From the NCBI RefSeq assembly GCF_001194135.2, contig NC_068995.1, positions 35,789,235-35,853,234 on the forward strand: DNA of 64,000 nucleotides. Reading direction: 5' to 3'. Below are positions 276-54,523 of the stretch, one piece after another. The stretch is from Octopus bimaculoides (taxonomy: Eukaryota). Position 1 is the first letter of the stretch. Each line of letters opens with the position of its first letter. The position numbers and the translations under genes are program-made. The notes under the pieces are model-generated. The model was not told the origin of the DNA. It saw only the letters and a program-made list of their open reading frames with translations, and made no database searches.

Positions 276-332
276 ATGGCTTTTATAGATGCAACTAATA
301 CTTTATCATCAACCAATTCCAGAAAATAATCC
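276..332 (-). CDS. CCCH-eTudor gene, last exon visible in window ((K)DYFLELVDDKVLVASIKA); gene continues beyond left edge
   Basis: Acceptor ttttgtttcag, donor GTAAGT. Phase 2/2 joins the previous exon (aa+g = Lys). Peptide fits the eTudor 'EA..YF..LV..K.L.A.I' motif. Confidence 0.85.
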
Positions 333-524
333 CTGAAACAAAAAGGAATTAGAGGTATTTGTTTTCTTATCATCTTCAAAAGATAGCGGAAGAGAATATA
401 ATATATCTCTAAAGAGGACAAATAGAATAGAATTAAGAGAGCTGATATGTACAGCTGATATGAAAAGTTTAGAGGAATGTATAGTTATTTGATAGGTTTC
501 TATGAGAATGTACTATAGTTTTTC

Positions 525-939
525 TACTCTTTACTCTTTTACTTGTTTCAGTCATTTGACTGCGGCCATGCTGGAGCGCCGCCTTTTTTAGCCAAGCAAA
601 TCGACCCCTGGACATATTCATTGGAAGCCTAGTACTCATTCTATCGGGCTCTTTTGCCGAACCGCTAAGTTACAGGGACGTAAACACACCACCATCGGTT
701 GTCAAGCGATGTTGAGGGACAAACACAGACACACAAACATATACATACACATACATATATATATATATATATACATATATACGACGGGCTTCTTTCAGTT
801 TCCGTCTACCAAATCCACTCACAAGGCTGGGGTCGGCCTGAGGCTATAGTAGAAGACACTTGCCCAAGGTGCCATGCAGTGGGATTGAACCCGGAACCAT
901 GTGGTTGGTAAGCAAGCTACTTACCACACAGCCACTCCT
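525..939 (-). mobile_element. tRNA-derived SINE family A (head aggagtggctgtgtggtaag...ggttc; internal CA/TA microsatellite; aaagagt tail)
   Basis: A/B-box-like head and near-identical copies elsewhere in the window. Confidence 0.9.
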
Positions 940-1121
940 GCACCTATACAATATTTGGTGATATTTTCTTTCATATGTTGCAGTCTAGTAAATGAGACAC
1001 ACCTAGAGCAACTGCATATCATATACAGCAACAAAAACATCAATATGATAAATCTTTTTTTAATTTATTCAGCATAATATCAATAAATAAAGCAAGAAAC
1101 TGAAATCCCATTGGTGCTTAC

Positions 1122-1279
1122 TTGGCTTCTTGGGTCCATAAACCATTATCAGAGGCTGAAACTATTCCATTAAGACAACATTCCACAGACTGGTGTGGAA
1201 GATGTGTAAACTGAGGGGCCAGTGACTGTATGTTACTCTCTGGAATCCACTGAACATTTCCAAAATCAATGAAGAATAC
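1122..1279 (-). CDS. CCCH-eTudor gene exon: VFFIDFGNVQWIPESNIQSLAPQFTHLPHQSVECCLNGIVSASDNGLWTQEA
   Basis: Acceptor ctctttgcag, donor GTAAGC, 158 nt, phase 0/2. Contains Tudor 'FxDFGN' and the extended-Tudor 'F..LP.Q..EC.L.G....W..EA' signature. Confidence 0.93.
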
Positions 1280-1554
1280 CTGCAAAGAGCAAAAGATAAT
1301 GCATGACTTGGTGAGAGAAATTTTCTTTCTTGTAAATTCCTATAATGGTAGGATAGGTTGAAAGGTTCTACAGTTCTGCTTACTTAATGCTATATTTTCT
1401 GACACGTAAGTTGAAACTTTTAGACCAAAATTTACAGCTAAAAAAAAAAACAGGTACATCATCTTATACAACAAGATGTCTTTGGAGGACCAAAAATACT
1501 ATGTGAACTGAAGCAGAATTTGGAAAAGTAGTAATGATGTCTGAATGTTTACAC

Positions 1555-2055
1555 TCTCTCTTTACTCTTTACTCTTTAACTTGTTTCAGTCATTTGACTG
1601 AGGCCATGCTGGAGCACCACCTTTAGTCGAGAAAATCGACCCCCAGGACTTATTCTTTGTAAGCCTAGTACTTATTCTATCGGTCTCTTTTTGCCGAACC
1701 GCTAAGTTATGGGGACGTGAACACACCAGCATCGGTTGTCAAGCGATGGTGGGGGGACAAACACAGACACACAAACACACATACACATNNNNNNNNNNNN
1801 NNNNNNNNNNNNNNNNNNNNNNNNNNNNNNNNNNNNNNNNNNNNNNNNNNNNNNNNNNNNNNNNNNNNNNNNNNNNNATATATATATATATATATACATA
1901 TATATACGACAGGCTTCTTTCAATTTCCGTCTTCCAAATGCACTCACAAGGCTTTGGTCGGCCCGAAGCTATAGTAGAAGACACTTACCCAAGGTGCCAC
2001 ACAGTGGGACTGAACCTGGAACCATGTGGTTGGTAAGCAGGCTACTTACCACACA
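1555..2055 (-). mobile_element. SINE family A copy (spans an N gap)
   Basis: High similarity to 525-939. Confidence 0.9.
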
Positions 2056-3415
2056 CAAAATATGCTATGTGAATTGTGAGTGCAAATATTCTGATATCTC
2101 ACATTTTTTCTAATCTAGAGTTTTAGCCACAATGCTCTAGCAATGTAGACATGTAATTCGGCAGTTGATTACATGTCAACAGTGAATATCATTATCTTTG
2201 TCATCACCATTCTTATTATTCTCATCACCTAGATCTGATAGTTCATATTATACCAACTGCGTAGTAAGCTCATAAACATGAGAGTTAAGCTGTTGTTAGA
2301 GACAATGCTTGGCTTTAATTTCAGTCACTTCACAAGGACGAGGTAGATGAGATTTATTGAAGTAAACTGAGTTACTTGGAAGCAGAAAAATCCCTGTAGC
2401 AGCAGATTTAACAATTAATACCTAAACAAACTTAGATATTTCACATGAGCAGAAAATATACCCAAGTAAATAGCTACCATGGAGGAATATGCAATTCTTA
2501 CCTAATGTCAAAATACACTAACTTCTTCAGATGTATACTTTAAAATAAGTTCACAATTTTAGCAGATGTTTTATGGGTGATATATTTCCATATAATTTTA
2601 CATCATGAAAATAATGTATGATTTGGGAATTATTGCCATCAGACTATGAACCAGGAATATCTTTCAAATAAAAGTATTTAGAATTGTAGTTTAAATTTAT
2701 TTCTGTCCTGGTCATTCAGAGTCTGTCCTGGGGGTGACCACAGTATAATACTTATTAATTAGGTGGTAGGAAATGCTACTAGGACTAACTATAAAAGATA
2801 TACTTCTTTTAGTGTAGGCATTATAGAAGACATAATTACTAGCTATTGCTAATTGAAGACATTTTGCAAAATCTTTCTGGTTATGTTTACAAAATACTTT
2901 CTTTAATACTTTGAATATCTAAAATAAATATACTTCTCCATTTTGTTTCCTTTACAAAGACCAGTCTGAAATTTTGAATGTATAAACTGTTATATTATGT
3001 ATTTGCATTAGGAACTGGTATCATCATCGAGTTCCTTCAAATTGCACAAGGGGTGGTTCCTGTCAGCCAGTGTATTTGTTGACTTGTTGCCTGACAAAGC
3101 TGTCAGATCATGTATTATATGAGGAACGATTATATACTTTTTTTCTTATATTTTGCCCGTTTAATTTACATTTCCAGTTTGTGAGGCCAGGAAAACAGTT
3201 TGCTTTTCTTGTAAATATAAACAAGCCGACAACTGTAATAGAATCTGAACTCAAGGCACTGAAAGTAATAGCCCAACAACTTAATCTCACAGCCAAGATA
3301 GCATTGTTAATTCCCCACCACCACCTAAAAAAAGAGAAAGAAACCACATGGAAAACATGAAAGCATATCCAGAAAAGAAGGAGTTGTAAAGTATTTAGAA
3401 CAGTGAAACTCTTAC

Positions 3416-3560
3416 CTTGACCTCGTTTATAACATCATTTACTTCACAAATGCGTGCTCTGTACCAATCTTGATCAACGACAGCTTGGGCTGCAACTAAC
3501 TCACCAATTCCCCAAAACAGATTCTCTTCAGCTTTGGGAAAAGACAACTTATAAAAGTCT
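3416..3560 (-). CDS. CCCH-eTudor gene exon: DFYKLSFPKAEENLFWGIGELVAAQAVVDQDWYRARICEVNDVINEVK (Tudor core)
   Basis: Acceptor ctcttacag, donor GTAAGA, 145 nt, phase 2/0. Tudor 'G.LVAA....D..WYRA.I' motif. Confidence 0.93.
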
Positions 3561-3798
3561 CTGTAAGAGGACAACAAATATAGAAAAGTATTACATAAGA
3601 TACACAGGTTTATACTGAGAAATATTACATAAGATACTTAGACAGTTTTATACAGTGAAGTATTAATTATGATAGACACAGGTTTATATAGAGGAATATT
3701 ACCTAAGATACACAAGTTTACATAGAAAAGTATTATGTCAGAGACATGGGTTTATATAGAGAAATATCACCAAAGATATATAAATATATAGAGAAGTG

Positions 3799-4075
3799 TA
3801 GGGTGTCCCAGAATTAACTATCTATTTCAATGAAACTGAGCAAATTTAAAAACAAACTGATAAAATTTTGTTTATAACTTAATTATGATACCAAAACAAA
3901 TAGATTTATAGATCATTCATCAAAACTTTATTGAAAATTTTCAACAAGTGCTCCATCTGTATCCATGCAAATTCAAATCTATTTTGAAGCATTTCATGAG
4001 TTATCTCTTGCACTGCTAATTGAATGCACTCTTTAAGCTCAACTAAACTATTGTTCCACTCTGAGGATGGAGGTA
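3799..4075 (-). mobile_element. Truncated Tc1/mariner-superfamily transposon end
   Basis: SLVELKECIQLAVQEITHEMLQN (transposase C-terminal motif) and a terminal TA|GGGTGTCCCAGAATT sequence. Confidence 0.65.
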
Positions 4076-5705
4076 GAGAAGATGATTGCAGCCAAATTGA
4101 TAAAAAGCTGTCTTGGACAGATAGGCAGGATCTAACAAGAATGAAAATAAAATTATTAAAAAAAATTATGAAAATATGAAAATTAGAAACAAAATAAAAA
4201 AAATCTATACACTTTATACACTGGATTGTCAAGGAGCCATGAGTAGGGGAAGATAAGGAGGATGCAGAAGAGAGTGAGGCAGGGAAGAGATCAAAGTAGA
4301 GGCAAATTATCACTGATTCAAAAAAATATATTATATTTCTGAGAGAAAAGCAGCAATTACTGGTTTCATATGCAAATTTTTTTTTTTCAAAATTATCAGA
4401 AATTATTTTGAGCTTTTGTCAAGCAAAAACATATATATTGGAGAGAATTTTTCGATATCAAATGTTAATTCTGTCTAAAAGTCACCTCCAACCCTGTTCA
4501 GTGAATGCACACAAGAAATCAAAATTTGGTAATATACATTATTTTAATATACAGTAAAATAAGAAAACTATACTCTCGGCCTTGTAAGTTATCTTCCTTG
4601 TCACCTAGTTTTCTAATTCAGATATGTCGCATACTCACATGTACACACAAGTAAGCATTCATGCATAAACACATGCTCTCTCACACATATACATACATTT
4701 ACTTACTCTCTTGTGCATTAGGTCTTGCAACTGCAAGACCTAATAGAGAAACAGAAAGTGAGAAAGAGAGAGAGGAGTGAGATAATGACAGAGAAGAAAA
4801 AGGAAAGAAATTTCAGAAAAATTCTATAAATCTTGGAAGAGTTTGGAGGAAATTTTAAGGAGAAAAGCTTTAGAAAAATAGAAAATAAATATTTTGGGAC
4901 CAAAAGTTTACTGGAGAAAGAAGAAACTTTTTCCTTGGATGAAAGGAGGCTGTAGGCTGAATAGGTGTCCATTGTCTAAGTATGAATTATGTGTTGTGTA
5001 TGCAGGAGTTCAAGATCTCTGTCTTAGCATTAAAATGCAATCCTATATTTTGCAAGTTTCTATGAATTGTGCTCTTTTCTGCAATATAGAGCTTATATCC
5101 AACTCTTGGCCAGGCAAGTTTTTCATGGAAGACTGGAATTGAACAATATTGCTTGTATGATGATGATGCTCAGTTACAACCATCCCATGATGTCAAGACA
5201 AGGGGTACACACAAACACATACACACAGAGATTGTAATATGCTTCTGAGAAAGACATATCTCTTCTTGAGCCAGTTTCTCTATCTTATAGTTAATAAGGA
5301 AAGCATTGTTTGATGTCTTGCAAACAATTCGCACATGCAAGTGCTACCAGTCAAGAACTCCGCATACCGGAAGCCAGCAAATGTATGGGGTCATCAGGAG
5401 AGAATGCATGCCGTTTCGGAGCCTACCTCTCAACGGCATCAATGCAGACCGGCCCCCCCTCACTGATATGAGGCCCCACTTCCTAGTTCAACCGGTTATT
5501 AAAAACAAAGCTCAATATTTTTCTAGCCATTGCTCATCGTCTCTTTTTAACCAAATCCAGTGGCTTGCATGCAAACACCACAATCTACAACAATTAACAT
5601 TATGAAATATATCCTAAAACCATTGTAAGACAGCAAGACAAAGAAAAAATATGAAGAACTCAAAAAAAAAAACCAGATAAAAGAAAGAAGGAAAAAAGTT
5701 CATAC

Positions 5706-5754
5706 TGTAAATCTTTCTGCAAGTCTGCTAAAGTTTCCTCTTTGTTTTGGTAAT
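5706..5754 (-). CDS. CCCH-eTudor gene 49-nt exon: (D)YQNKEETLADLQKDL(Q), eTudor helix
   Basis: Acceptor tctaatag, donor GTATGA. Phase 1/2 exactly bridges the 6899-7078 and 3416-3560 exons in frame. Confidence 0.85.
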
Positions 5755-6008
5755 CTATTAGACATAAAGAAAATTATAAAATTCATAGCAAAAATAAATA
5801 GAAATAAAGCATTCTCAAAATCCCAATATAAGCAAAGTAGTATGTCATTGCAAAATAATCAACTAAGTAATAAGATGTGCATGTCAGTCAAGTTAACAGT
5901 GTTTCTCTACATATATGTGTGAGTGTATCTAAATGTGTTAAGCTATGAATATGTATGGGTGAACATATGTTGTTTTCTATGTGTGTGTATGTATTTGTGA
6001 AGGCCTCT

Positions 6009-6310
6009 GTGGAGGCATGTGCTTAGTGCTTAGGGTGTTGGATTCACAATCGTAAGATTGTGGTCTTGATTCCTGGACCAGGTAATGCATTGTGTTCTTG
6101 AGCAAGACACTTCATTTCACATTGCTCCTGTCCACTCAGCTGTAGAAATGAGTACCACTAGTGGAGGCACGTTGCTTAGTGGTTGGATTTATGACTCTAA
6201 GATTGTGGTCTTGATCCCTGGACCAGGCGATCCGTTGTGTTCTTGAGCAAAACACTTCATTTCATGTTGCTCCCGTCCACTCAACTGTAGAAATGAGTTT
6301 AACCTGGTGA
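6009..6310 (+). mobile_element. Head-to-tail dimer of tRNA-derived SINE family C 5' halves
   Basis: Two consecutive ggaggca...cttagtg...ttcttgagcaa.acacttcatttca...cactca.ctgtagaaatgagt units. Confidence 0.85.
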
Positions 6311-6529
6311 GGGATGGGCTCCACCAGGCTTTCTCACCCAAGATACGCTGCATGGCTGCAGCATCCCAACAACCTCCAAGGGGTTAAGGGACTTGTCATT
6401 GTCTGTATTTGTATGAATATGTAGCTGAATGTGTTTCTGTTTGTGTAGTTAAAAGTATTTAAGTATGTATAGTTAAATGTATTCATATATGTCTAGATAA
6501 ATGTGTTTCTATAAAATAAAATATAAATG

Positions 6530-6775
6530 TGCCCTTTTAAAGCCTAGCCAGGCTCATGGGCCCAGATTTCCAATATCAATGGTGTATGTGTTCCCCAGCT
6601 GGACGGGACGTCAGTTCATCGCAGTGTTACTCATTTTTGCCAGCTGAGTGGACTAGAGCAATGTGAAATGAAGTGCTTTGCTCAAGAACACAACGCATCA
6701 CCCAGTCCAGGAATTGAAACCACAATCTTACAATCATGATGCTGACACCCTAACCACTAAGCCACACGCCTCCAC
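6530..6775 (-). mobile_element. SINE family C copy, inverted relative to 6009-6310
   Basis: Reverse complement matches the family C head. Another copy at ~59230-59580(+). Confidence 0.88.
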
Positions 6776-6898
6776 AAATGTGTTTCTATACATGTAGTTA
6801 AATGTACATATGAATGATTAAAATGCATGTATAGTTAAAAGTGAGTGATGCATAAAATAGTAGTAGCAACTCCAAAACTAATATGCATATATTCTTAC

Positions 6899-7078
6899 CT
6901 GGCATGTCATGCAGGTCTTTGATAGCATCCTTGCCCCAAGGTAAAATCAAATAAAAGTGAGCAGGATTTATGATAGCGCTAACTTCTACCCCAACTAGAG
7001 AACCAACCAATGGTAGTTCAAATTCAGAACAACTATCATCTTTGCAAACAACTTCTCTTTTGTCAACTGTGAGGCAAT
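6899..7078 (-). CDS. CCCH-eTudor gene exon: CLTVDKREVVCKDDSCSEFELPLVGSLVGVEVSAIINPAHFYLILPWGKDAIKDLHDMP
   Basis: Acceptor ctccttcag, donor GTAAGA, 180 nt, phase 1/1. 'V.VSAIINP.HFY' is the N-terminal strand pair of extended Tudor domains. Confidence 0.92.
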
Positions 7079-7329
7079 CTGAAGGAGATAAGATACATAA
7101 GAAAATAGCAAAATATACTGGGTAAAAATAATGAAAACCAAAAAGAGAGGCAACACATGATTGTAAGTATGCTGACAGTAAAAACATTTTTTTTTATTAC
7201 CATAAACTGTATCAATAGATCGTAAATATACTGGTTTATAACTGGGGCTTGTCTCTAGTTCTAAGGGAAACTATGCGGAAAGCATTGTAAATTATAATCT
7301 AAAAAATACCAACTTCATTATTGTGAGTT

Positions 7330-7527
7330 ATATTTTATCTGTTTCAATCATTAGACTGCATCCATGCTGGAGCACCATCCTTGAAGAATTTTTAGTCCAA
7401 CAGACTGATTCTAGTACTTATGTAATATTTTTCTTTTAAGACTGACACTTATTCTATCAGTTTCTTTTGCTGAACTGGTAAGTTACTGAGATGTAAATAT
7501 ACCAACACCAGTTGTCCACTGGTGATA

Positions 7528-7593
<66 letters not shown>

Positions 7594-7765
7594 GTATATA
7601 TACACACAATAGGCTTCTTTCAGGTTCTGTCTACCAAATCCACTCACAAGGCTTTGGTTAACCTGAGGCTATAGTAGAAGACACTTTCCCAAGGTGCTAC
7701 GCATTGGGACTGAACCCAGAACCATGTGGTTAGGAAGCAAGCTTCTTACTACAAAGTCATGCCTG
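7330..7765 (-). mobile_element. SINE family A copy (older)
   Basis: Same head and body, CpG-decayed. Confidence 0.85.
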
Positions 7766-8327
7766 TTAGATTAGTTGTGCATAACAACTGTTAACTTCAG
7801 TAGAGTATCTTCTTGATAAAAGAGTTAACAGCTAATTACTAGTTGCTTTATAAAGATGATATCAGATTTTTATTTTTAGAGACAGAAATTTCAGAGTTAA
7901 ATGTTAGTATAAAGGATAAATTTCACTTCCTAAAAGTACAAAGACATCATCTTTAAAAACTAAATCCCAGTTCCTTCACAAAGAGTTCATAATAAGCTCA
8001 CAATTAACCTTTAGCACACTGTAAGTGCATCATATCACCGTGTGAGTTTTTTCCCCTATAGTAACAGAGCAGTAGCAGGGGAAACAATTCTAAAGAAAAT
8101 GCAGTATGCGAAAAGTTAAAAAGGTTCAGATATATATAGAATAACTTGAAGCTGTGATAGCCATAACTTTATCAAAGAAGATACCAAATGCTTAAAGACT
8201 CTTTTAGACATACTGGGAGAATTAAATGTATTGACTAGTAGCACAATATAAAATATGTAGTAAAAGTGAAGATTGCATTTATATATTCGTTGTGCTGCTT
8301 ACACTAATAATGTAAGTAAAAACATAC

Positions 8328-8426
8328 CATCTGGTACTCTTATGTGTTTATATGGACATTTTGATCCAAGTTTACATTTTTGACCGTCTCTGTAAAACTT
8401 GCAGATTGTTTTTTCATCATTAACCA
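8328..8426 (-). CDS. CCCH-eTudor gene exon encoding CCCH zinc finger: VNDEKTICKFYRDGQKCKLGSKCPYKHIRVPD
   Basis: Acceptor atttcatttcag, donor GTATGT, 99 nt, phase 1/1, in frame with the next exon. C-x8-C-x5-C-x3-H spacing. Confidence 0.92.
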
Positions 8427-9314: not shown

Positions 9315-9443
9315 NNNNNNNNNNNNNNNNNNNNNNNNNNNNNNNNNNNNNNNNNNNNNNNNNNNNNNNNNNNNNNNNNNNNNNNNNNNNNNNNNNNNNN
9401 NNNNNNNNNNNNNNATATATACATATATATATATATATCTCAT

Positions 9444-11334: not shown

Positions 11335-11570
11335 ATACTTTTACACTTTTACACTTTTACTTGTTTCAGTCTTTTGACTGCGGCCATGCTGGAGCACCGC
11401 CTTTAGTCGAAGAAATCGACCCCAGGACTTATTCTTTGGAAGCCTAGTACTTATTCTATCGGTCTCTTTTGCCGAACCACTAAGTTACGGGGACATAAAC
11501 ACACCAGCATCGGTTGTCAAGCGATGTTGGGGGGACAAACACAGACATACAAACACACACACACACATAT
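11335..11570 (-). mobile_element. SINE family A 3' part
   Basis: Near-identical to 525-760. Confidence 0.85.
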
Positions 11571-11818
11571 ATATATATATGGGGAGGGGCTGATCTGTGT
11601 GTGTTCAATTTGTTGTCCTAACACAGTAACAGTCAAAGTAAGCCATGCTTGATGTTATGGTCCTCATATAGCCATTACAGANNNNNNNNNNNNNNNNNNN
11701 NNNNNNNNNNNNNNNNNNNNNNNNNNNNNNNNNNNNNNNNNNNNNNNNNNNNNNNNNNNNNNNNNNNNNNNNNNNNNCACACAGCCACTCTCGGTGCCTT
11801 GTTGTACCACTCTTCTGA

Positions 11819-30300: not shown

Positions 30301-31497
30301 CTATAAACGTGTCACGATTTCTACAGAACTTTGCTCAAATAAAAGATTGTCATTACAATGAACAGTCATGGATGACTGCTTTGATACCAAATTGTAATTT
30401 GAAGCAAATAAAGATCTGTCCGAATCATATAGTGTTGGTCGGGAATTAGATGTCTGGCAAGAGTGTTGTATATGGATGGGTGCAGTTGCCATAGTGTTTG
30501 CTGTGAAACCAATGTTGTATGTAGAAGACGTGTTTTGACAGCAATATCTCCAGCAGCAGATTGTAAAGTTGTGCCAGTGGCTAGTTACCACACTATTAAT
30601 TTCTTGGCATTGATAAGCATGAAGAACAGCACATGTAATAGACTTGAATAGAGGTAGAAGTAAAAAATAGAGGATTGTATAACTTGGCTTTGTATTGTCC
30701 TCATCACAGAAATAGGAAATGGCAATGTAAAATATCAAAGGCAGATATGTCAACAGCCATACTATAATGTGATACTTTGATATTGAGAGCAATCCTGCAT
30801 ATCTTTTGTATTCTTTACTACTCAGAGTAAGGATGTGATCATTGTTTTGTATCCGTCGGTTTAGGCATTGATAATAAATAAGTAAACAAATAGTGATGAA
30901 AACACAGTTATTCCAAAGTATTCCAACAAATAGCAAGAATGTGGAACTGTAGTAGCAGAAAAACAAGCATGTGTAATCAAACAACACCCATCCCATCTGA
31001 GAAGAGAATCCAATGATAAAAGAACCATTCCAAACAATCACCATGAGAGCAATGACATTTTTCTTGTGCATATGAAACTGCAAGTCAAGCGGCCGTGACA
31101 GCCTCACAGAACTGTCTGCTGTCAACCAGAGCAAAGAAAGTGCTGAGGCTGTTGATGCTGTAATAAGAAGGCTTTCTGACAGAAAACAATCAATAGAACG
31201 AATTTTGCGATATTCTATATATATTGTTTTCACAACGCCAAACAACCCTATGAGGGCATCAGCAACAATCAAACTTCGAACAAAAACTAATGAAGGGCTT
31301 TGACCTCCACTAGCATTTTTTGACTCAATCAGAACAAAACTGTTCAAAATAAAAGACAAGGATCCGAGAACAGCAAATAAAATTTGAATGACAATCAGGT
31401 TATTATCCTCTGGCCACTCCAAAGTCTTCAAATTGGAGCAGTTGGAGAAGATCTTTGAGTAGTTATATCTACAACGCATCTGCATGACAGTGGTCAT
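30301..31497 (-). CDS. Intronless class A (rhodopsin-like) orphan GPCR, 398 aa, MECA/GPR119-like, with degenerate activation motifs
   Basis: Uninterrupted ORF with an in-frame upstream stop and seven hydrophobic segments. N1.50 (ILNSF), SLIVAD (D2.50), C3.25, 'RPL' in ICL2, W4.50 followed by 'SQMGW', Y5.58, P6.50, and helix-8-like 'AYQCQEIN'. Confidence 0.93.
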   Translation of the reverse strand: MTTVMQMRCRYNYSKIFSNCSNLKTLEWPEDNNLIVIQILFAVLGSLSFILNSFVLIESKNASGGQSPSLVFVRSLIVADALIGLFGVVKTIYIEYRKIRSIDCFLSESLLITASTASALSLLWLTADSSVRLSRPLDLQFHMHKKNVIALMVIVWNGSFIIGFSSQMGWVLFDYTCLFFCYYSSTFLLFVGILWNNCVFITICLLIYYQCLNRRIQNNDHILTLSSKEYKRYAGLLSISKYHIIVWLLTYLPLIFYIAISYFCDEDNTKPSYTILYFLLLPLFKSITCAVLHAYQCQEINSVVTSHWHNFTICCWRYCCQNTSSTYNIGFTANTMATAPIHIQHSCQTSNSRPTLYDSDRSLFASNYNLVSKQSSMTVHCNDNLLFEQSSVEIVTRL

Positions 31498-31766
31498 GAG
31501 TAGTGAGACCCAAACAGATTAGATTTATCAGCATAAGTATTCCTCCCAACACTGGGTCTGTGCAACACATTTTATATTTGCTTTTGGTTCAGTTGCAATC
31601 TGGAGAGTCTAGTTAAGGCATTAGCATGAGAAAGAAGATTAAAAAAAACCCCAGAAAACCTGGATGGATTTTCTTTACAATGAATGGTCAAATATACCTT
31701 AAAATCAATCCAACATACAGTTTCACTACACACACAGCATACTAACACTACACTCTTACATATCAT

Positions 31767-42399: not shown

Positions 42400-44590
42400 A
42401 GTTTAATATTATATCTACCAGTTGTATTCGAGTATAAATATCTATTTTTATAACCATTAAAAGAATTCTTTTCAAATCTTTTTCTCCATATACTCTTTGT
42501 TATTATTGCTCCTGTGCATCTGCCACATACAAATACTACTTTCTCCATTAACCTACTTGTAAAACCACTGCACATCTTGAGTGTCCTTAGCTTGCACTGA
42601 GTATGCTGTATGGAATTTCTACCAACTTTTTTCTGTATAACAAGTAAAGCTATTTTCCTGAAGAGAGTAGAAGAATCCTGTCAGTTTTCCTGCTTACCAG
42701 AACTTTGGTCTTTGCTAAGTAAACTTTAAGGCCCTTTGATTTCAAATTTCGCTTCTACACCTGGAATTCCATTTCTTATTCTACTATAGATTTTGATTTA
42801 AGAATAAGGTCATCAGCATACAGCAATTCCCATGGGCAACTAGACTTAATCTCCTTTATTATGGCTCAAAGGATCACGATGAATAAGAGGCAAATGAGAG
42901 CTGAGCCCTGATAAACTCCTACCTGCACATTAAATTCATAGCTTTACCCATTAATTTTGCCTTACTAACAGTATCTCTGCACATGGTTTGTGTGGTTCTC
43001 ACAAGCCAGTCATCTACCCCTAGCTTCCTCTGTGACCACCATATTGCAGAGAGGACCCTGCTGAAGGCTTTCTCCAGGTTGTCGAATGCTAAACACAGTG
43101 GCTTAATTTTGACTAAATACTCCTCCTGCAATTGCCACACTAGCAAGAGGATATCTCTAATACCTTTTCTCTGGCACAAACCAAACTGCATCTCACTAGT
43201 CTAAATTTTTCTCTAATTAATTGGGCTATAACGCTTTTTTTAACTTTCATGACCTGATTCAGCAATTTGATGCTTTTGTAATTACTTCTATCAAAGGCAT
43301 CCCCTTCATCCTTATAGCAGTTGACTATAATACTACTGTGCCAGTCATTGGTATGACACCTTCCTGTATACTCTGATTGACTATGCAGTTAACTAGGTTG
43401 TATCCAATACTATCAAATATTTTAAGTATCTTAGCAGTAATCCTTGATGAGCCATAGGCTTTTCCTGTTCCCATATCCTTAATTGTCTTATCTATCAAAC
43501 TGTTATCAGCTAGAACTAGAATGGCTGGACCCTCTGTTAAATCCATGCTTGGAAGTCCCTCTTTCACCCATACATTCTACACGTTTAATAACATTTCATA
43601 ATAGTGCTCTCCATGCATCTTTCATTTTAGAATCACTAAATGCAAGTGTACTATTATCCATCTGCACACACTTCTTATCTACAACATCTCAATTCTGATA
43701 CACCATCTTGCAATCCAGAACACCTAATCCTCATACATAGAACACTGGCAAACCTCTTTCTTTCTGTTTCTCCCCTTGTAAAATAATCTTGCTACCTAGC
43801 TTCTCTCCTAATTACCTGATATAATTCTCTACTATCCTCATTCGTTCAAGCCTATCTCTGCAATTGTCTGGCTGGAACATACACCAGTCGCAGATTTGGT
43901 CTGTAACCCTCAGTAGATTGCCTCATAAGAACTTCCAGTTGACTTCTATTATTTATTTCTTTATTGCCCAGAGAGGGCTAAACATAGAGTGGACAAGAAA
44001 GGACAGACAAAGGGATTAAGTTGATTATATCAACCCCAGTGCATAACTGGTACTTATTTAATTGACCCCGAAAGGATAAAAGGTAAAGTTGACCTTGGTG
44101 GAATTTGAACTCAGAATGTAACAGCAGACAAAATACCACCAAACATTTTGCCTGAAGTGCTAATGATTCTACCAGTTCACTGCCCTAATATATATATATA
44201 TCACTGACCTCTATACTATACACCTCTATCTCCGCGTCTATTTCATCAAATGCTTTAGTCAGAACTTCATTAAAACTCTGTGTGTTTAATAAATCCTTAC
44301 TCTTCTGTATCTCCTTTATAATGCTTGTTTGTAACCCTGAATTCTTGAAGCTCTAAGTCTGAAGTCATTAACCAGTAGCCAATGCTGGAGTGTACATTTT
44401 TTATCAGGGAAGGACTCTGCATTTATAACCATACATCTGTCTCGTTTTTTCTAGTGAGAATGCACCCAATCTGACTTGTGTACCTGCCAGACTGATAGGT
44501 GATCATGTGTCTAGCTGGTTCCCTGAAGTTAGTTTTGCAAACTGTTAGGTCATTTGTATTGCAGAACTCCAAAAGCCTTGTTCCCTCCTT
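42400..44590 (-). mobile_element. Decayed RTE-clade LINE (endonuclease C-terminus and RT), interrupted by a SINE at ~43945-44190
   Basis: Translations include QFGLCQRKGIRDILLLVWQLQEEYLVKIKPLCLAFDNLEKAFSRV...WW and EGPAI...KTIKDMGTGKAYGSSRITAKILK, typical RTE ORF segments with stops and frameshifts. Confidence 0.9.
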
Positions 44591-44621
44591 TTATATATAC
44601 ACATATATGCATGGGTGTTTG

Positions 44622-52636: not shown

Positions 52637-52757
52637 ATATATGGCCATATCACGTTCGAAACACTAGTTCTTGTCTGTTCATCAAAGTTAAGCAGTGTCG
52701 GGCCTCATTAGCACTTAGATGGGTGACCGCTTAAGAAACCTAGGTGCTGTAAATATT
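52637..52757 (+). pseudogene. 5S rRNA: Full-length decayed 5S rRNA copy
   Basis: tatggccatatcacgttcgaaacactagttcttgtctgttcatcaaagttaagcagtgtcgggcctcattagcacttagatgggtgaccgcttaagaaacctaggtgctgt is colinear with metazoan 5S rRNA. Many differences are CpG->TG/CA/TA, and there is no T-run terminator. Confidence 0.9.
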
Positions 52758-53607: not shown

Positions 53608-54523
53608 TTGGGTTATCTCATAAATAATGTGGTTTTTTCAATTGCATTCAACTAAAAGTTGGAGGAGGATGGGATAAACTACCTGCATCAATGTGTTTTA
53701 AAAGCAGGTAGTAATTTTACCTTGTCCTTATTCTTAATGCAAGTTTTGAAGAATGCAGTTCGATTTTAACTGTTATTTTTTCAAAGCTATAATGGAGCAT
53801 ATTCGGCATATTTTGCTCTATGAGCTCAATAAAGGCAAAAACTGAACAGAAAGTGTGAGGAATATTAATGCAGTATATGGGAATTGGACAATAAGCATAA
53901 GCCAGTGTCAATGGTGGTTCCAGAAATTCTGAGCCAGAAACTACAGCTTAGAAGATGAGCCTTGTCCTGGAAAATCTGCAGAGCTCAACAAGGACATCTT
54001 GCAAAACCCTGGTGGAACAAAATCCCATCATAACTGTTGAGTAACTAGCAGAGAAGCTTGGATTTGGTCATTCAACCATTCATTGGCATCTGCGCTAGAA
54101 GAAAAAGAACCATCTTTGGTTTCGAGACGAAAGGTATTCTTCCATCAGGATAATACTTGGCCACATACAGCAATGATGACATTCCAAAGGCTGGAACAGT
54201 TTGAATGGGAAACGATGCCCGACCCACAATATTCACCAGACATTGCCCCATCTGATTATCATTTATTCCACAGTCTTCAAAATAATTTGGATGGAAAAAA
54301 ATATGAATTCTGTAGATGTGGTCAGAACAGGACTGGAGGAGTATTTTTCATCACAGACAAGTGAATTTTAGAAGAGAGGCCTTGCAAGTCTACCAGATAG
54401 ATGGAAGAGCATTGTAGAAAATGAAGGAGAGGATATTTTAGATTAGAAAAGAACTTCGTTTATCTTAATTTTGAAAAATAAAAGAAGTATAAAAAAACCC
54501 ACATTATTTATGGGATGACTCAA
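53608..54523 (+). mobile_element. Internally deleted, inactivated mariner (DD34D) transposon
   Basis: TA flanks and ~28-bp TIRs (ttgggttatctcataaataatgtgg / ccacattatttatgggatgactcaa). HTH region MEHIRHILLYE... has stops. Catalytic 'HQDN..PH' and 'YSPDIAPSDYHLF' present. Confidence 0.93.

What the first reader, a model, noticed from the sequence alone, without database searches (positions are those of the whole stretch)
276..8426. Hidden six-exon gene encoding a CCCH zinc finger fused to an extended Tudor domain (Krimper-like module)
Seen: six small exons, mostly missed by the ORF track, splice in frame with canonical GT-AG sites into ~229 aa: ...CKFYRDGQKCKLGSKCPYKH-30 aa-GSLVGVEVSAIINPAHFY...GELVAAQAVVDQDWYRARI...VFFIDFGN...LPHQSVECCLNGI...WTQEAKDYFLELV. 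Established: a CCCH finger directly N-terminal to an eTudor occurs in the piRNA factors Krimper (Drosophila) and TDRD12. Inference: as I recall the Krimper sequence (unverified), the ~30-residue spacer and the 'GSxVG' start resemble its ZnF-eTud2 more than TDRD12's atypical Tudor. Krimper is usually described from insects, so a molluscan Krimper-type protein would suggest an older ping-pong adaptor module.
Basis: partly seen in the sequence, partly recalled or inferred. Interest (0 to 1): 0.8.

Follow-up and report, generated by a model that had tools for sequence, protein, structure and literature searches.

The report
Zinc-finger–Tudor end of a germline scaffold gene
The six small exons are real. 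They encode the tail end (a CCCH zinc finger followed by an extended Tudor domain) of a large three-Tudor protein family found in molluscs and amphioxus, most likely a docking scaffold for PIWI proteins; it is built like the fly factor Krimper, but shared descent with Krimper could not be tested.

Summary
Observation confirmed. On the minus strand, six exons (8426-8328, 7078-6899, 5754-5706, 3560-3416, 1279-1122, 332-276) join in frame through AG/GT sites into 228 aa. Pfam finds zf-CCCH and TUDOR. The peptide aligns without a gap (65% identity, dN/dS about 0.07) to residues 965-1192 of a 1256-aa Sepia esculenta transcript product, which supports all five junctions. The assembly gap 1789-1877 lies in intron 4 inside a SINE microsatellite and removes no coding sequence.

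This is a gene fragment. Exon 1 opens in mid-codon behind an acceptor, and exon 6 ends at a donor at the window edge. Orthologues in ten mollusc species and amphioxus are 1233-1915 aa: a conserved N-terminal helical region, three extended Tudor domains, a WDPM/RNSY/DVDD motif, the CCCH finger about 30 aa before the last Tudor, and a tail ending in PG. NCBI calls them 'TDRD1-like', but they have no MYND or KH domain.

The Krimper reading is partly supported. The domain layout matches published Krimper. By sequence and by fold, however, the Tudor domain is nearer TDRKH/Papi and TDRD1 than Krimper eTud2, and I could not obtain a Krimper sequence. In cephalopods the last Tudor domain has Ala at the first aromatic-cage position.

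The parts
8328..8426 (-). Exon 1 of the fragment (99 nt): ..VNDEKTICKFYRDGQKCKLGSKCPYKHIRVPD, the CCCH zinc finger. It starts with two bases of a split codon behind the acceptor ttcag, so at least one exon lies upstream.
   Evidence: splice sites, frame; zf-CCCH 4.6e-5, aa 5-27; 67% identity to Sepia P0018 residues 965-994.
6899..7078 (-). Exon 2 (180 nt): the linker after the finger and the first SN-like beta strands of the extended Tudor domain (LPLVGSLVGVEVSAIINPAHFYLILPWG..).
   Evidence: 2.6e-20 against the orthologue profile; AlphaFold strands 60-70 and 73-77.
5706..5754 (-). Exon 3, a 49-nt micro-exon (DYQNKEETLADLQKDL), the start of the linker helix. It is required to keep the frame.
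   Evidence: AG/GT, frame; 11 of 14 residues identical to Sepia P0018 1060-1073.
3416..3560 (-). Exon 4 (145 nt): the linker helix and the first half of the Tudor core (GELVAAQAVVDQDWYRARI). It carries Ala135 at the first aromatic-cage position and cage residue Tyr142.
   Evidence: 4.1e-13; alignment A1.
1789..1877 (.). Assembly gap (89 N) inside intron 4, within the microsatellite of one SINE copy. It has no effect on the reading frame.
   Evidence: gap list; the flanks are the two halves of one repeat copy; ungapped protein alignment across the exon 4/5 junction.
1122..1279 (-). Exon 5 (158 nt): the second half of the Tudor core (VFFIDFGN, with cage residues Phe160, Phe163 and Asn165) and the start of the C-terminal SN-like part (LPHQSVECCLNGI).
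   Evidence: 2.8e-24; 60% identity to Sepia P0018 1119-1186.
276..332 (-). Exon 6 (57 nt): DYFLELVDDKVLVASIKA. It ends at a GTAAGT donor. In the orthologues about 65 more residues follow, so the 3' end of the gene lies beyond window position 1.
   Evidence: 70% identity to P0018 1174-1193; the orthologues continue to a tail ending in PG.

Best explanation
The six exons are the penultimate part of a cephalopod gene for a large germline-type scaffold protein. The gene belongs to a conserved but unnamed family seen here in bivalves, gastropods, a cuttlefish and amphioxus.

Family layout: a conserved N-terminal helical region of about 86 aa, a long disordered linker, two extended Tudor domains, a conserved WDPM..RNSY..DVDD..GVA..GYK motif, one C-x8-C-x5-C-x3-H finger, about 30 residues, a third extended Tudor domain, and a short tail ending in (V/I/T)PG.

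Shown here: the exon structure, the two domains, the collinearity with a real transcript, strong purifying selection, and the family layout.

Inferred from what extended Tudor domains do in TDRD1, TDRKH/Papi, Tudor-SN and Krimper: each Tudor domain docks the arginine-rich, symmetrically dimethylated N-terminal tail of a PIWI protein. A three-Tudor protein with a self-associating N-terminus would then hold several PIWI proteins together in nuage during piRNA biogenesis or ping-pong.

The finger most resembles the RNA-binding CCCH fingers of RBM22, U2AF and CPSF30. It may hold an RNA next to the last PIWI-docking site.

In the two cephalopod proteins the last Tudor domain keeps Tyr, Phe, Phe and Asn of the methyl-arginine cage but has Ala where other members have Phe or Tyr. 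I infer weaker dependence on methylation, as reported for TDRD2.
For: - Exons, splice sites and frame.
- Pfam TUDOR 3e-22 and zf-CCCH 4.6e-5.
- Ten collinear orthologues of 1233-1915 aa cover query residues 1-226 at their C-terminal ends. They are named 'TDRD1-like' or 'uncharacterized' in Argopecten, Mytilus, Haliotis, Patella, Solemya, Sinanodonta, Mercenaria, Pinctada and Branchiostoma.
- In nine of those ten orthologues Pfam finds TUDOR plus zf-CCCH; Sinanodonta has TUDOR only. Three Tudor domains are found in all but Branchiostoma and Mercenaria. None has MYND, KH, helicase or RING.
- Signature motifs and the PG tail.
- Conserved N-terminal region.
- P0018 is a full-length 4040-nt transcript from Sepia esculenta larval RNA-seq run SRR23936171 (PMC10571815).
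- Ungapped 65% identity, pN 0.22 against pS 0.74.
- Extended Tudor fold, with best structural matches TDRD1 eTD3, TDRD2 and Papi, all PIWI-tail binders.
- The finger's best solved relatives are RBM22, U2AF23 and CPSF4.
- Cage residues.
- TDRD2 preference for unmethylated arginine: PMC10212539.
Against: - No upstream exon of the gene was found in the 55.6 kb of window upstream. That covers the two other Tudor domains, the WDPM motif and the N-terminal region.
- A same-strand intronless GPCR ORF lies in that interval. The link between this fragment and a long gene therefore rests on homology, not on this assembly.
- There are no expression data for this species.
- PIWI binding, RNA binding by the finger and germline expression are all inferred. 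The Sepia transcripts come from whole larvae, not gonad.
- The AlphaFold models are only moderately confident (mean pLDDT 62-65) and give no confident packing of the finger on the Tudor domain.
Confidence: 0.8

Rival explanations
1. The family is the non-insect orthologue of Krimper. In that case Krimper would be a reduced, fast-evolving insect version of an ancestral bilaterian protein (helical domain, Tudor domains, CCCH finger, Tudor domain), and this cephalopod gene would act as a ping-pong adaptor pairing two PIWI proteins. This extends the best explanation rather than excluding it.
For: - The layouts match point by point. Krimper has a coiled-coil Krimp domain at 1-83, eTud1 at 285-461, a zinc finger within 462-552 and eTud2 at 551-746 as its last domain (PMC12526068). 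It is listed as ZnF-CCCH (PMC12147562).
- The family has a conserved helical region of about 86 aa at the N-terminus and a CCCH finger about 30 aa before the last extended Tudor domain.
- No other characterised piRNA Tudor protein in the sources I read has this combination.
- The family lacks the defining extra domains of TDRD1, TDRKH, TDRD12, Qin and Vreteno.
Against: - Krimper eTud2 is a weak match: 7e-6 and core only, against 1e-32 for TDRKH. By Foldseek it ranks 21-26 at 17-24% identity.
- Krimper eTud1 is not detected by sequence at all.
- The family has three Tudor domains, not two. Its upstream domains keep the four aromatic cage positions, although the middle one often has Asp for the cage Asn. 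Krimper eTud1 lacks three of the four aromatic residues (PMC8249470).
- No Krimper sequence could be obtained, so neither the finger, the upstream motif nor the N-terminal domain could be compared.
Confidence: 0.4
2. In this species the finger-Tudor module is a separate short gene of about 300 aa with its own small 5' exon, not the tail of a three-Tudor gene.
For: No upstream exon was found in 55.6 kb, and a same-strand GPCR ORF lies at 31518-30304 in between. The split first codon is NTG, which would permit A|TG.
Against: Exon 1 has a good internal acceptor and no in-frame ATG of its own. The Sepia transcript carries the module as residues 965-1256 of one 1256-aa ORF. Nine of the ten full-length orthologues place the finger and last Tudor domain at the end of a long protein. 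The short NCBI models of 255 and 316 aa sit in the same 90% clusters as full-length ones. The window contains ten assembly gaps that could hide small exons.
Confidence: 0.12
3. It is simply a TDRD1 or TDRKH orthologue, as the automatic NCBI names of its relatives suggest.
For: The best solved-structure matches by sequence and by fold are TDRKH/Papi and TDRD1. NCBI names the relatives 'TDRD1-like' and 'TDRKH-like'.
Against: No MYND finger (TDRD1) and no KH domain (TDRKH) appears in any full-length orthologue at E<=0.01. The family has its own conserved motifs, a CCCH finger and a PG tail. Among the 150 best hits of a search of 1.84 billion representatives, no other protein carried the finger.
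Confidence: 0.08
4. It is a decaying pseudogene remnant, or a chance concatenation of open frames.
For: Only part of the gene is visible, and the surrounding DNA is very repeat-rich.
Against: There are no stops or frameshifts in six exons, all ten internal splice signals are canonical, pN/pS is 0.22/0.74 against Sepia, and all 20 family-invariant residues are retained.
Confidence: 0.03

Closest known systems
Unnamed mollusc/amphioxus three-Tudor CCCH family (e.g. Sepia esculenta transcript product P0018; XP_069142431.1 Argopecten; XP_071178897.1 Mytilus; XP_067684612.1 Haliotis; XP_035676031.1 Branchiostoma)
   Same: Collinear and ungapped with the Sepia member (65% identity) and 35-42% identical to the others over the whole fragment. 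It has the same CCCH spacing class, the same ~30-aa spacer and the same Tudor signature (WYRA..VFFVDFGN..LPxQAVEC). All 20 invariant residues are kept.
   Different: Only residues equivalent to about 965-1192 of 1256 are in the window. The upstream Tudor domains, the WDPM/RNSY motif, the N-terminal helical region and the PG tail cannot be seen here. The cephalopod members have Ala instead of Phe/Tyr at cage position 1 of the last Tudor domain.
Krimper (Drosophila; putative Aedes orthologue Atari)
   Same: The layout as published: an N-terminal coiled-coil domain of about 85 aa, extended Tudor domains, a CCCH-type finger just before the last, C-terminal extended Tudor domain, and a last Tudor domain with a (near-)canonical cage.
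   Different: Krimper has two Tudor domains, not three, and its eTud1 has a degenerate cage. Sequence and fold similarity of the Tudor domain is lower than to TDRKH, TDRD1, Tudor-SN and Tudor. Orthology is untested because no Krimper sequence was available.
TDRD1 (mouse/human)
   Same: A multi-eTudor PIWI scaffold. Its eTD3 is the best structural match (Foldseek E 4e-12 to 3e-17, 28-30% identity).
   Different: TDRD1 has an N-terminal MYND finger and four Tudor domains, with no CCCH finger. The family here has no MYND.
TDRKH/TDRD2 and Papi/BmPapi
   Same: The best sequence match of the last Tudor domain (profile E 1e-32, 1e-28 and 2e-27). By my own reading of the alignment, TDRKH is likewise non-aromatic at the first cage position (Leu, where this protein has Ala). 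TDRD2 is reported to prefer unmethylated arginine-rich PIWI tails.
   Different: TDRKH has KH domains, a single Tudor domain and a mitochondrial anchor, and no CCCH finger.
RNA-binding CCCH fingers of RBM22, U2AF small subunit and CPSF30
   Same: The finger matches them best among solved structures (E 2e-5 to 1e-2) and has the C-x8-C-x5-C-x3-H spacing.
   Different: Here a single finger is embedded in a Tudor scaffold. There is no evidence of RNA binding.

Membership tests
CCCH (C3H1) zinc finger | C-x7-9-C-x4-6-C-x3-H with aromatic and basic residues; Pfam PF00642 above its cut-off | tested here: met
   CKFYRDGQKCKLGSKCPYKH is C-x8-C-x5-C-x3-H. PF00642 scores 23.7 bits against a cut-off of 20.5. 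The four ligands are invariant in 11 sequences.
Extended Tudor (Tudor-SN type) domain | Pfam PF00567 match covering the Tudor core plus flanking SN-like elements | tested here: met
   PF00567 at 3e-22, aa 62-195, profile positions 8-121 of 121. AlphaFold gives N-terminal strands, a linker helix, a four-strand core and following strands. All top Foldseek matches are extended Tudor domains.
Extended Tudor (Tudor-SN type) domain | Complete C-terminal SN-like half | not testable with these tools
   The last ~65 residues lie beyond window position 1. They are present in the orthologues and fold as expected in the P0001 model.
Methyl-arginine-reading Tudor domains | Cage of four aromatic residues plus Asn (Krimper Y624, Y630, Y646, Y649, N651) | tested here: not met
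   The window protein has Ala135, Tyr142, Phe160, Phe163 and Asn165, that is three of four aromatics plus Asn. Sepia also has Ala, while most other members have Phe/Tyr.
Mollusc/amphioxus three-Tudor CCCH family | CCCH finger about 30 aa before the last extended Tudor domain, collinear with family members | tested here: met
   Ungapped against Sepia P0018 965-1192. All 20 invariant columns of A1 are kept.
Mollusc/amphioxus three-Tudor CCCH family | Two further upstream Tudor domains, the WDPM/RNSY/DVDD motif and the N-terminal helical region | tested here: not met
   Not found anywhere in window 8427-64000 on either strand. They may lie beyond the window or in assembly gaps.
Mollusc/amphioxus three-Tudor CCCH family | C-terminal tail ending in (V/I/T)PG | not testable with these tools
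   It lies off the window. It is present in all ten full-length members.
Krimper | Zinc finger (CCCH) immediately N-terminal to the last, C-terminal extended Tudor domain | tested here: met
   Window. Krimper: finger between eTud1 and eTud2, within residues 462-552, with eTud2 at 551-746 (PMC12526068); listed as ZnF-CCCH (PMC12147562). This is a comparison of layouts only.
Krimper | N-terminal coiled-coil self-association (Krimp) domain | tested here: inconclusive
   The orthologues share a conserved helical-looking region of about 86 aa at the N-terminus. That part of the gene is not in the window, and it could not be compared with the Krimp domain sequence.
Krimper | Sequence orthology (closest characterised relative; reciprocal best hit) | tested here: inconclusive
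   Among solved structures Krimper eTud2 ranks below TDRKH, Papi, TDRD1, Tudor-SN, Tudor, Spindle-E and Qin. No reciprocal search was possible, because no full Krimper sequence was reachable.
Krimper | Upstream Tudor domain with a degenerate cage that binds unmethylated Ago3 | tested here: not met
   The family's upstream Tudor domains keep the F/Y, Y, F/Y, F/Y cage. The middle one often has Asp for Asn. This was tested on orthologues, not on the window gene.
TDRD1 | N-terminal MYND zinc finger plus four extended Tudor domains | tested here: not met
   No MYND hit in any of 11 full-length relatives at E<=0.01; Pfam counts three Tudor stretches in ten of them.
TDRKH/Papi | KH domains plus a single extended Tudor domain | tested here: not met
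   No KH hit in any relative.
TDRD12 / Yb family | DEAD-box helicase core and CS domain flanking the Tudor domain | tested here: not met
   No helicase or CS hit. The sources I read list no CCCH finger for TDRD12 (PMC12526068).

The most novel reading that the evidence does not exclude
Krimper is not an insect invention. It would be the reduced insect descendant of an ancestral bilaterian scaffold (N-terminal self-association domain, extended Tudor domains, a WDPM/RNSY motif, a CCCH finger, a terminal extended Tudor domain) that survives with three Tudor domains in molluscs and amphioxus and was apparently lost or reshaped in vertebrates. The finger-plus-Tudor unit would then be an ancient, conserved working module of the ping-pong adaptor.
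Probability: 0.4. Interest if true: 0.6.

Novelty: new member of a known kind. Interest (0 to 1): 0.4.

Why it matters
For this genome, the result recovers part of a piRNA-pathway-type gene whose exons are too small for an ORF scan. It also shows that the fragment continues off the window at one end and is separated from its 5' part at the other.

More generally, the analysis defines an unnamed, well-conserved protein family that public annotation mislabels as 'TDRD1-like' or 'TDRKH-like'. Its layout is the only one I found that matches Krimper. In the paper library searched here, no paper reports Krimper outside arthropods, and the function of its zinc finger is unknown.

If the relationship holds, slowly evolving mollusc and amphioxus sequences would offer a way to study what the finger and the motif before it do. 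The cephalopod-specific loss of one cage residue also gives a simple, testable prediction about methylation dependence.

Tried and rejected
- The word-indexed protein search gave one hit with the peptide and ten or eleven with the profile. None carried a CCCH finger apart from P0001, and no insect Krimper appeared. The tool did not return even the sequences in my own query alignment, so its silence proves nothing. The third search was effectively wasted.
- I could not obtain any Krimper sequence. The PDB constructs exclude the finger, only the five best PDB alignments are printed, the supplement of PMC8249470 holds no sequences, and PMC4545750 is not held.
- Upstream exons were sought by tblastn with ten orthologues, by short-chunk tblastn and a regular expression, by a full-length profile against all ORF pieces on both strands, and by a motif-only profile. 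Nothing was found. The best motif hit, MEEYLSSRN at 54232-54098, lies opposite a mariner-like fragment and is noise.
- AlphaFold of the module was meant to show whether the finger packs on the Tudor domain. The finger and linker came out at low confidence, so no conclusion can be drawn.
- A profile of the full-length family against the PDB did not detect Krimper eTud1.
- Rejected: a processed pseudogene (introns are present), a TE-derived ORF (the exons do not overlap the repeat families), and a coding role for the gap.

Full report
**Observation**

The feature is on the minus strand. Reading the reverse complement, six exons can be defined exactly: 8426-8328, 7078-6899, 5754-5706, 3560-3416, 1279-1122 and 332-276. 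Each is preceded by a pyrimidine-rich tract and AG, and each is followed by GT (GTATGT, GTAAGA, GTATGA, GTAAGA, GTAAGC, GTAAGT). Joined together they give 688 nt with one open frame of 228 complete codons.

Exon 1 begins with two bases of a split codon directly behind its acceptor and has no in-frame ATG, so it is an internal exon. Exon 6 ends at a strong donor 275 bases from the window edge, so the gene also continues downstream, off the window. This is therefore a fragment of a gene, not a whole six-exon gene.

**The assembly gap**

The run of N at 1789-1877 lies in intron 4, between 3416 and 1279. Its left flank (1568-1788) and right flank (1878-2065) match, in order and orientation, the two halves of a SINE that is also present at 530-940, 7320-7765 and from 11348. 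In those copies a CA/TA microsatellite sits where the Ns are. Other gaps in the window (9315-9414, 11682-11777) sit in the same kind of microsatellite.

The encoded protein aligns without a gap across the exon 4/5 junction to a transcript-derived protein. The gap therefore hides no coding sequence and does not affect the frame.

**Is it more than chance?**

Pfam finds TUDOR (PF00567, 3e-22, residues 62-195, nearly the whole model) and zf-CCCH (PF00642, 4.6e-5, residues 5-27), both above their curated cut-offs. The finger is C-x8-C-x5-C-x3-H.

An exhaustive search of 1.84 billion representative proteins returned mostly giant multi-Tudor proteins. It also returned ten proteins that cover the query from residue 1-6 to 226 collinearly at their C-terminal ends. 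The closest, P0018 (1256 aa), is the product of a complete 4040-nt transcript contig from run SRR23936171. A paper identifies that run as Sepia esculenta larval RNA-seq (PMC10571815). The cluster has 51 members drawn from many runs.

The window peptide aligns to P0018 residues 965-1192 with no gap at all: 148/228 identical, 66.5% nucleotide identity, pN 0.22 against pS 0.74, giving a rough dN/dS of 0.07 with synonymous sites near saturation. Because P0018 comes from spliced mRNA, an ungapped alignment across all five junctions is good indirect support for the splice model, including the 49-nt micro-exon. A pseudogene or a chance concatenation is excluded for practical purposes.

**What the gene is**

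The other collinear hits are from Argopecten, Mytilus, Haliotis, Patella, Solemya, Sinanodonta, Mercenaria, Pinctada and Branchiostoma floridae. They are 1233-1915 aa long and are named 'tudor domain-containing protein 1-like', 'uncharacterized' or 'hypothetical' by their sources. Short partial models in the same clusters are named 'tudor and KH domain-containing protein-like'.

In nearly all of them Pfam finds three Tudor stretches plus one CCCH finger placed just before the last one. None has MYND, KH, helicase, CS, RING or LOTUS.

Aligning the C-terminal modules (alignment A1) and the full proteins (A4) shows a family signature with four parts:
- A conserved N-terminal region of about 86 residues with a helical-looking pattern (..VxEKxxxIxEQ...LLxxxDxxxFxxxYVxVMQxLDxCxNxCxLLTAxAED).
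- Two extended Tudor domains.
- The motif WDPMxEDFxSxRNSYxVDVDDxGVAxxGYKxxDE running straight into the finger, then about 30 residues with conserved T-x-D and LP.
- The last extended Tudor domain and a tail ending in (V/I/T)PG at the C-terminus.

None of the giant multi-Tudor proteins among the 150 best hits has the finger or these motifs. The window protein keeps all 20 invariant residues of A1.

**What is missing from the window**

The ten orthologues used in tblastn, overlapping 80-residue chunks of the Sepia N-terminal 970 residues, a full-length family profile run without filters against every ORF piece of at least 15 aa on both strands, and a motif-only profile all found only the six exons. 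The two other Tudor domains should be easy to see, because they cross-hit exon 5.

So the 5' 75% of the gene is not in 8427-64000. Three possibilities remain: the intron before exon 1 is longer than 55.6 kb, small exons are hidden in some of the ten assembly gaps with the rest lying beyond 64000, or the scaffold is mis-joined. A same-strand, apparently intronless rhodopsin-family GPCR ORF at 31518-30304 (7tm_1, 1.6e-10) lies in that interval. It would be nested if the long-intron reading is right. A stand-alone short gene cannot be excluded, but the internal acceptor, the Sepia transcript and all the orthologues argue against it.

**How it probably works**

The AlphaFold model of the window peptide has mean pLDDT 65, with the Tudor core around 80. 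The model of the complete module of the metatranscriptome homologue P0001 has mean pLDDT 62, with the Tudor and SN-like parts at 75-90. Both show the extended Tudor arrangement: two N-terminal strands, a linker helix, a four-strand core, then SN-like strands and a helix.

Every top Foldseek match is an extended Tudor domain solved with, or known to bind, a PIWI tail: TDRD1 eTD3, TDRD2, Papi, BmPapi, Tudor-SN, Krimper eTud2, Qin and Tudor. By established knowledge of these domains, the likely function is docking of arginine-rich, symmetrically dimethylated PIWI N-termini. A protein with three such domains and a conserved N-terminal helical region is then most simply a multivalent nuage scaffold. 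This function is inferred, not shown.

The cage can be read from the alignment, anchored on the F/Y-x-D-F/Y-G-N motif and on the Krimper numbering Y624, Y630, Y646, Y649, N651 (PMC8249470). The window protein has Ala135, Tyr142, Phe160, Phe163 and Asn165. The first position is Phe or Tyr in eight of eleven family sequences. It is Ala in both cephalopods and is missing in Patella.

By my reading of the alignment, TDRKH also lacks an aromatic residue at that position and is the best sequence match. It is reported to prefer the unmethylated PIWIL1 tail (PMC10212539). I therefore predict reduced methyl dependence for the cephalopod domain.

In the orthologues the two upstream Tudor domains keep the four aromatic cage positions. 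The middle one often has Asp in place of the cage Asn.

Among solved structures the finger's nearest relatives are the RNA-binding CCCH fingers of RBM22, U2AF23 and CPSF4/CPSF30. This suggests, and no more than suggests, an RNA contact next to the last docking site. The models give no confident packing of the finger against the Tudor domain.

**Comparison with Krimper and the other candidates**

[quoted passage not shown] A 2025 survey lists it as ZnF-CCCH with no vertebrate counterpart (PMC12147562).

The layout of the family found here parallels this closely, and it lacks the defining domains of TDRD1, TDRKH, TDRD12, Qin and Vreteno. Several points count against a simple identification:
- A profile of the module scores TDRKH at 1e-32, Papi at 1e-28, BmPapi at 2e-27, TDRD1 at 3e-27, Tudor-SN at 1e-17, Tudor at 8e-14, Spindle-E at 7e-8 and Qin at 7e-7, but Krimper eTud2 at only 7e-6, and over the core alone.
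- Foldseek puts Krimper eTud2 at rank 21-26 with 17-24% identity.
- Krimper eTud1 is not detected by sequence.
- The family has three Tudor domains, and its upstream domains are not degenerate in the way Krimper eTud1 is.

Drosophila piRNA factors evolve fast, so this does not refute common descent.

I could not obtain a Krimper sequence by any route, so the finger, the motif before it and the N-terminal domain could not be compared directly. The recalled 'GSxVG' resemblance is untested. Neither source that describes TDRD12 or the Yb family supports a CCCH finger in it. No paper in the searchable library links Krimper to molluscs.

**Verdict**

However, the object is the tail of a three-Tudor gene from a conserved family that is already predicted, though misnamed and uncharacterised. 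Membership of the Krimper family is unproven.

I file it as a new member of a known kind, a multi-eTudor PIWI scaffold. I put the chance that the family is the ancestral form of Krimper at about 40%. That would be of moderate interest to piRNA specialists.

Noticed in passing
window 30304-31518 (-): A 405-codon stop-to-stop ORF without introns matches the rhodopsin-family 7TM receptor model (PF00001, 1.6e-10, residues 59-287). It lies on the same strand as the Tudor fragment, about 22 kb upstream of its first visible exon, so it is either nested in a very long intron or a separate neighbouring gene.
   Followed up: partly
window 52637-52755 (+): A full-length match to 5S ribosomal RNA (Rfam RF00001, 63.6 bits against a gathering score of 38, model positions 1-120). 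It could be a 5S gene copy or a 5S-derived repeat. No tandem array was seen.
   Followed up: no
window 530-940, 1568-2065, 7320-7765, 11348-11660 and others: A SINE-like repeat family with an internal CA/TA microsatellite occurs in several introns of the Tudor gene and beyond. At least three assembly gaps (1789-1877, 9315-9414, 11682-11777) fall exactly in such microsatellites, so the gaps look like sequencing failures in simple repeats rather than joins of unrelated contigs.
   Followed up: partly
window 3566-3809: A tandem array of about seven units of ~34 nt (AGACACAGGTTTATATAGAGRAATATTACMTAAG-like) starts only 6 nt upstream of the acceptor of exon 4, inside intron 3.
   Followed up: no
window 54041-54361 (+): An ORF piece with ..HQDNTWPHTA..PQYSPDIAPSDYHLFHSLQ.., which I recognise from memory as the C-terminal catalytic region of a mariner/Tc1 transposase. 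Pfam gave no hit at E<=0.01. The weak 'RNSY-motif' hit on the opposite strand (54232-54098) is explained by this element.
   Followed up: partly
window 42900-44600 (-): Several adjacent ORF pieces look like a degraded LINE (endonuclease-like KEGTRLLEFCNTNDLTV.., RT-like ..LCLAFDNLEKAFSRV..). Pfam gave no hit at E<=0.01 for the three pieces tested.
   Followed up: partly
window 6021-6142 / 6182-6298 and 6641-6762: Two direct copies and one inverted copy (84% complementary, about 500 nt apart) of a ~120-nt repeat lie in intron 2 of the Tudor gene. They could form a long hairpin in the pre-mRNA.
   Followed up: no
orthologues P0099, P0101, P0105, P0115, P0117, P0151 (middle Tudor domain): In most bivalve and gastropod members the middle Tudor domain has D-F/Y-G-D instead of D-F/Y-G-N, that is Asp in place of the methyl-arginine-contacting Asn, as TDRKH also does. 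Sepia, Sinanodonta and amphioxus keep Asn.
   Followed up: no
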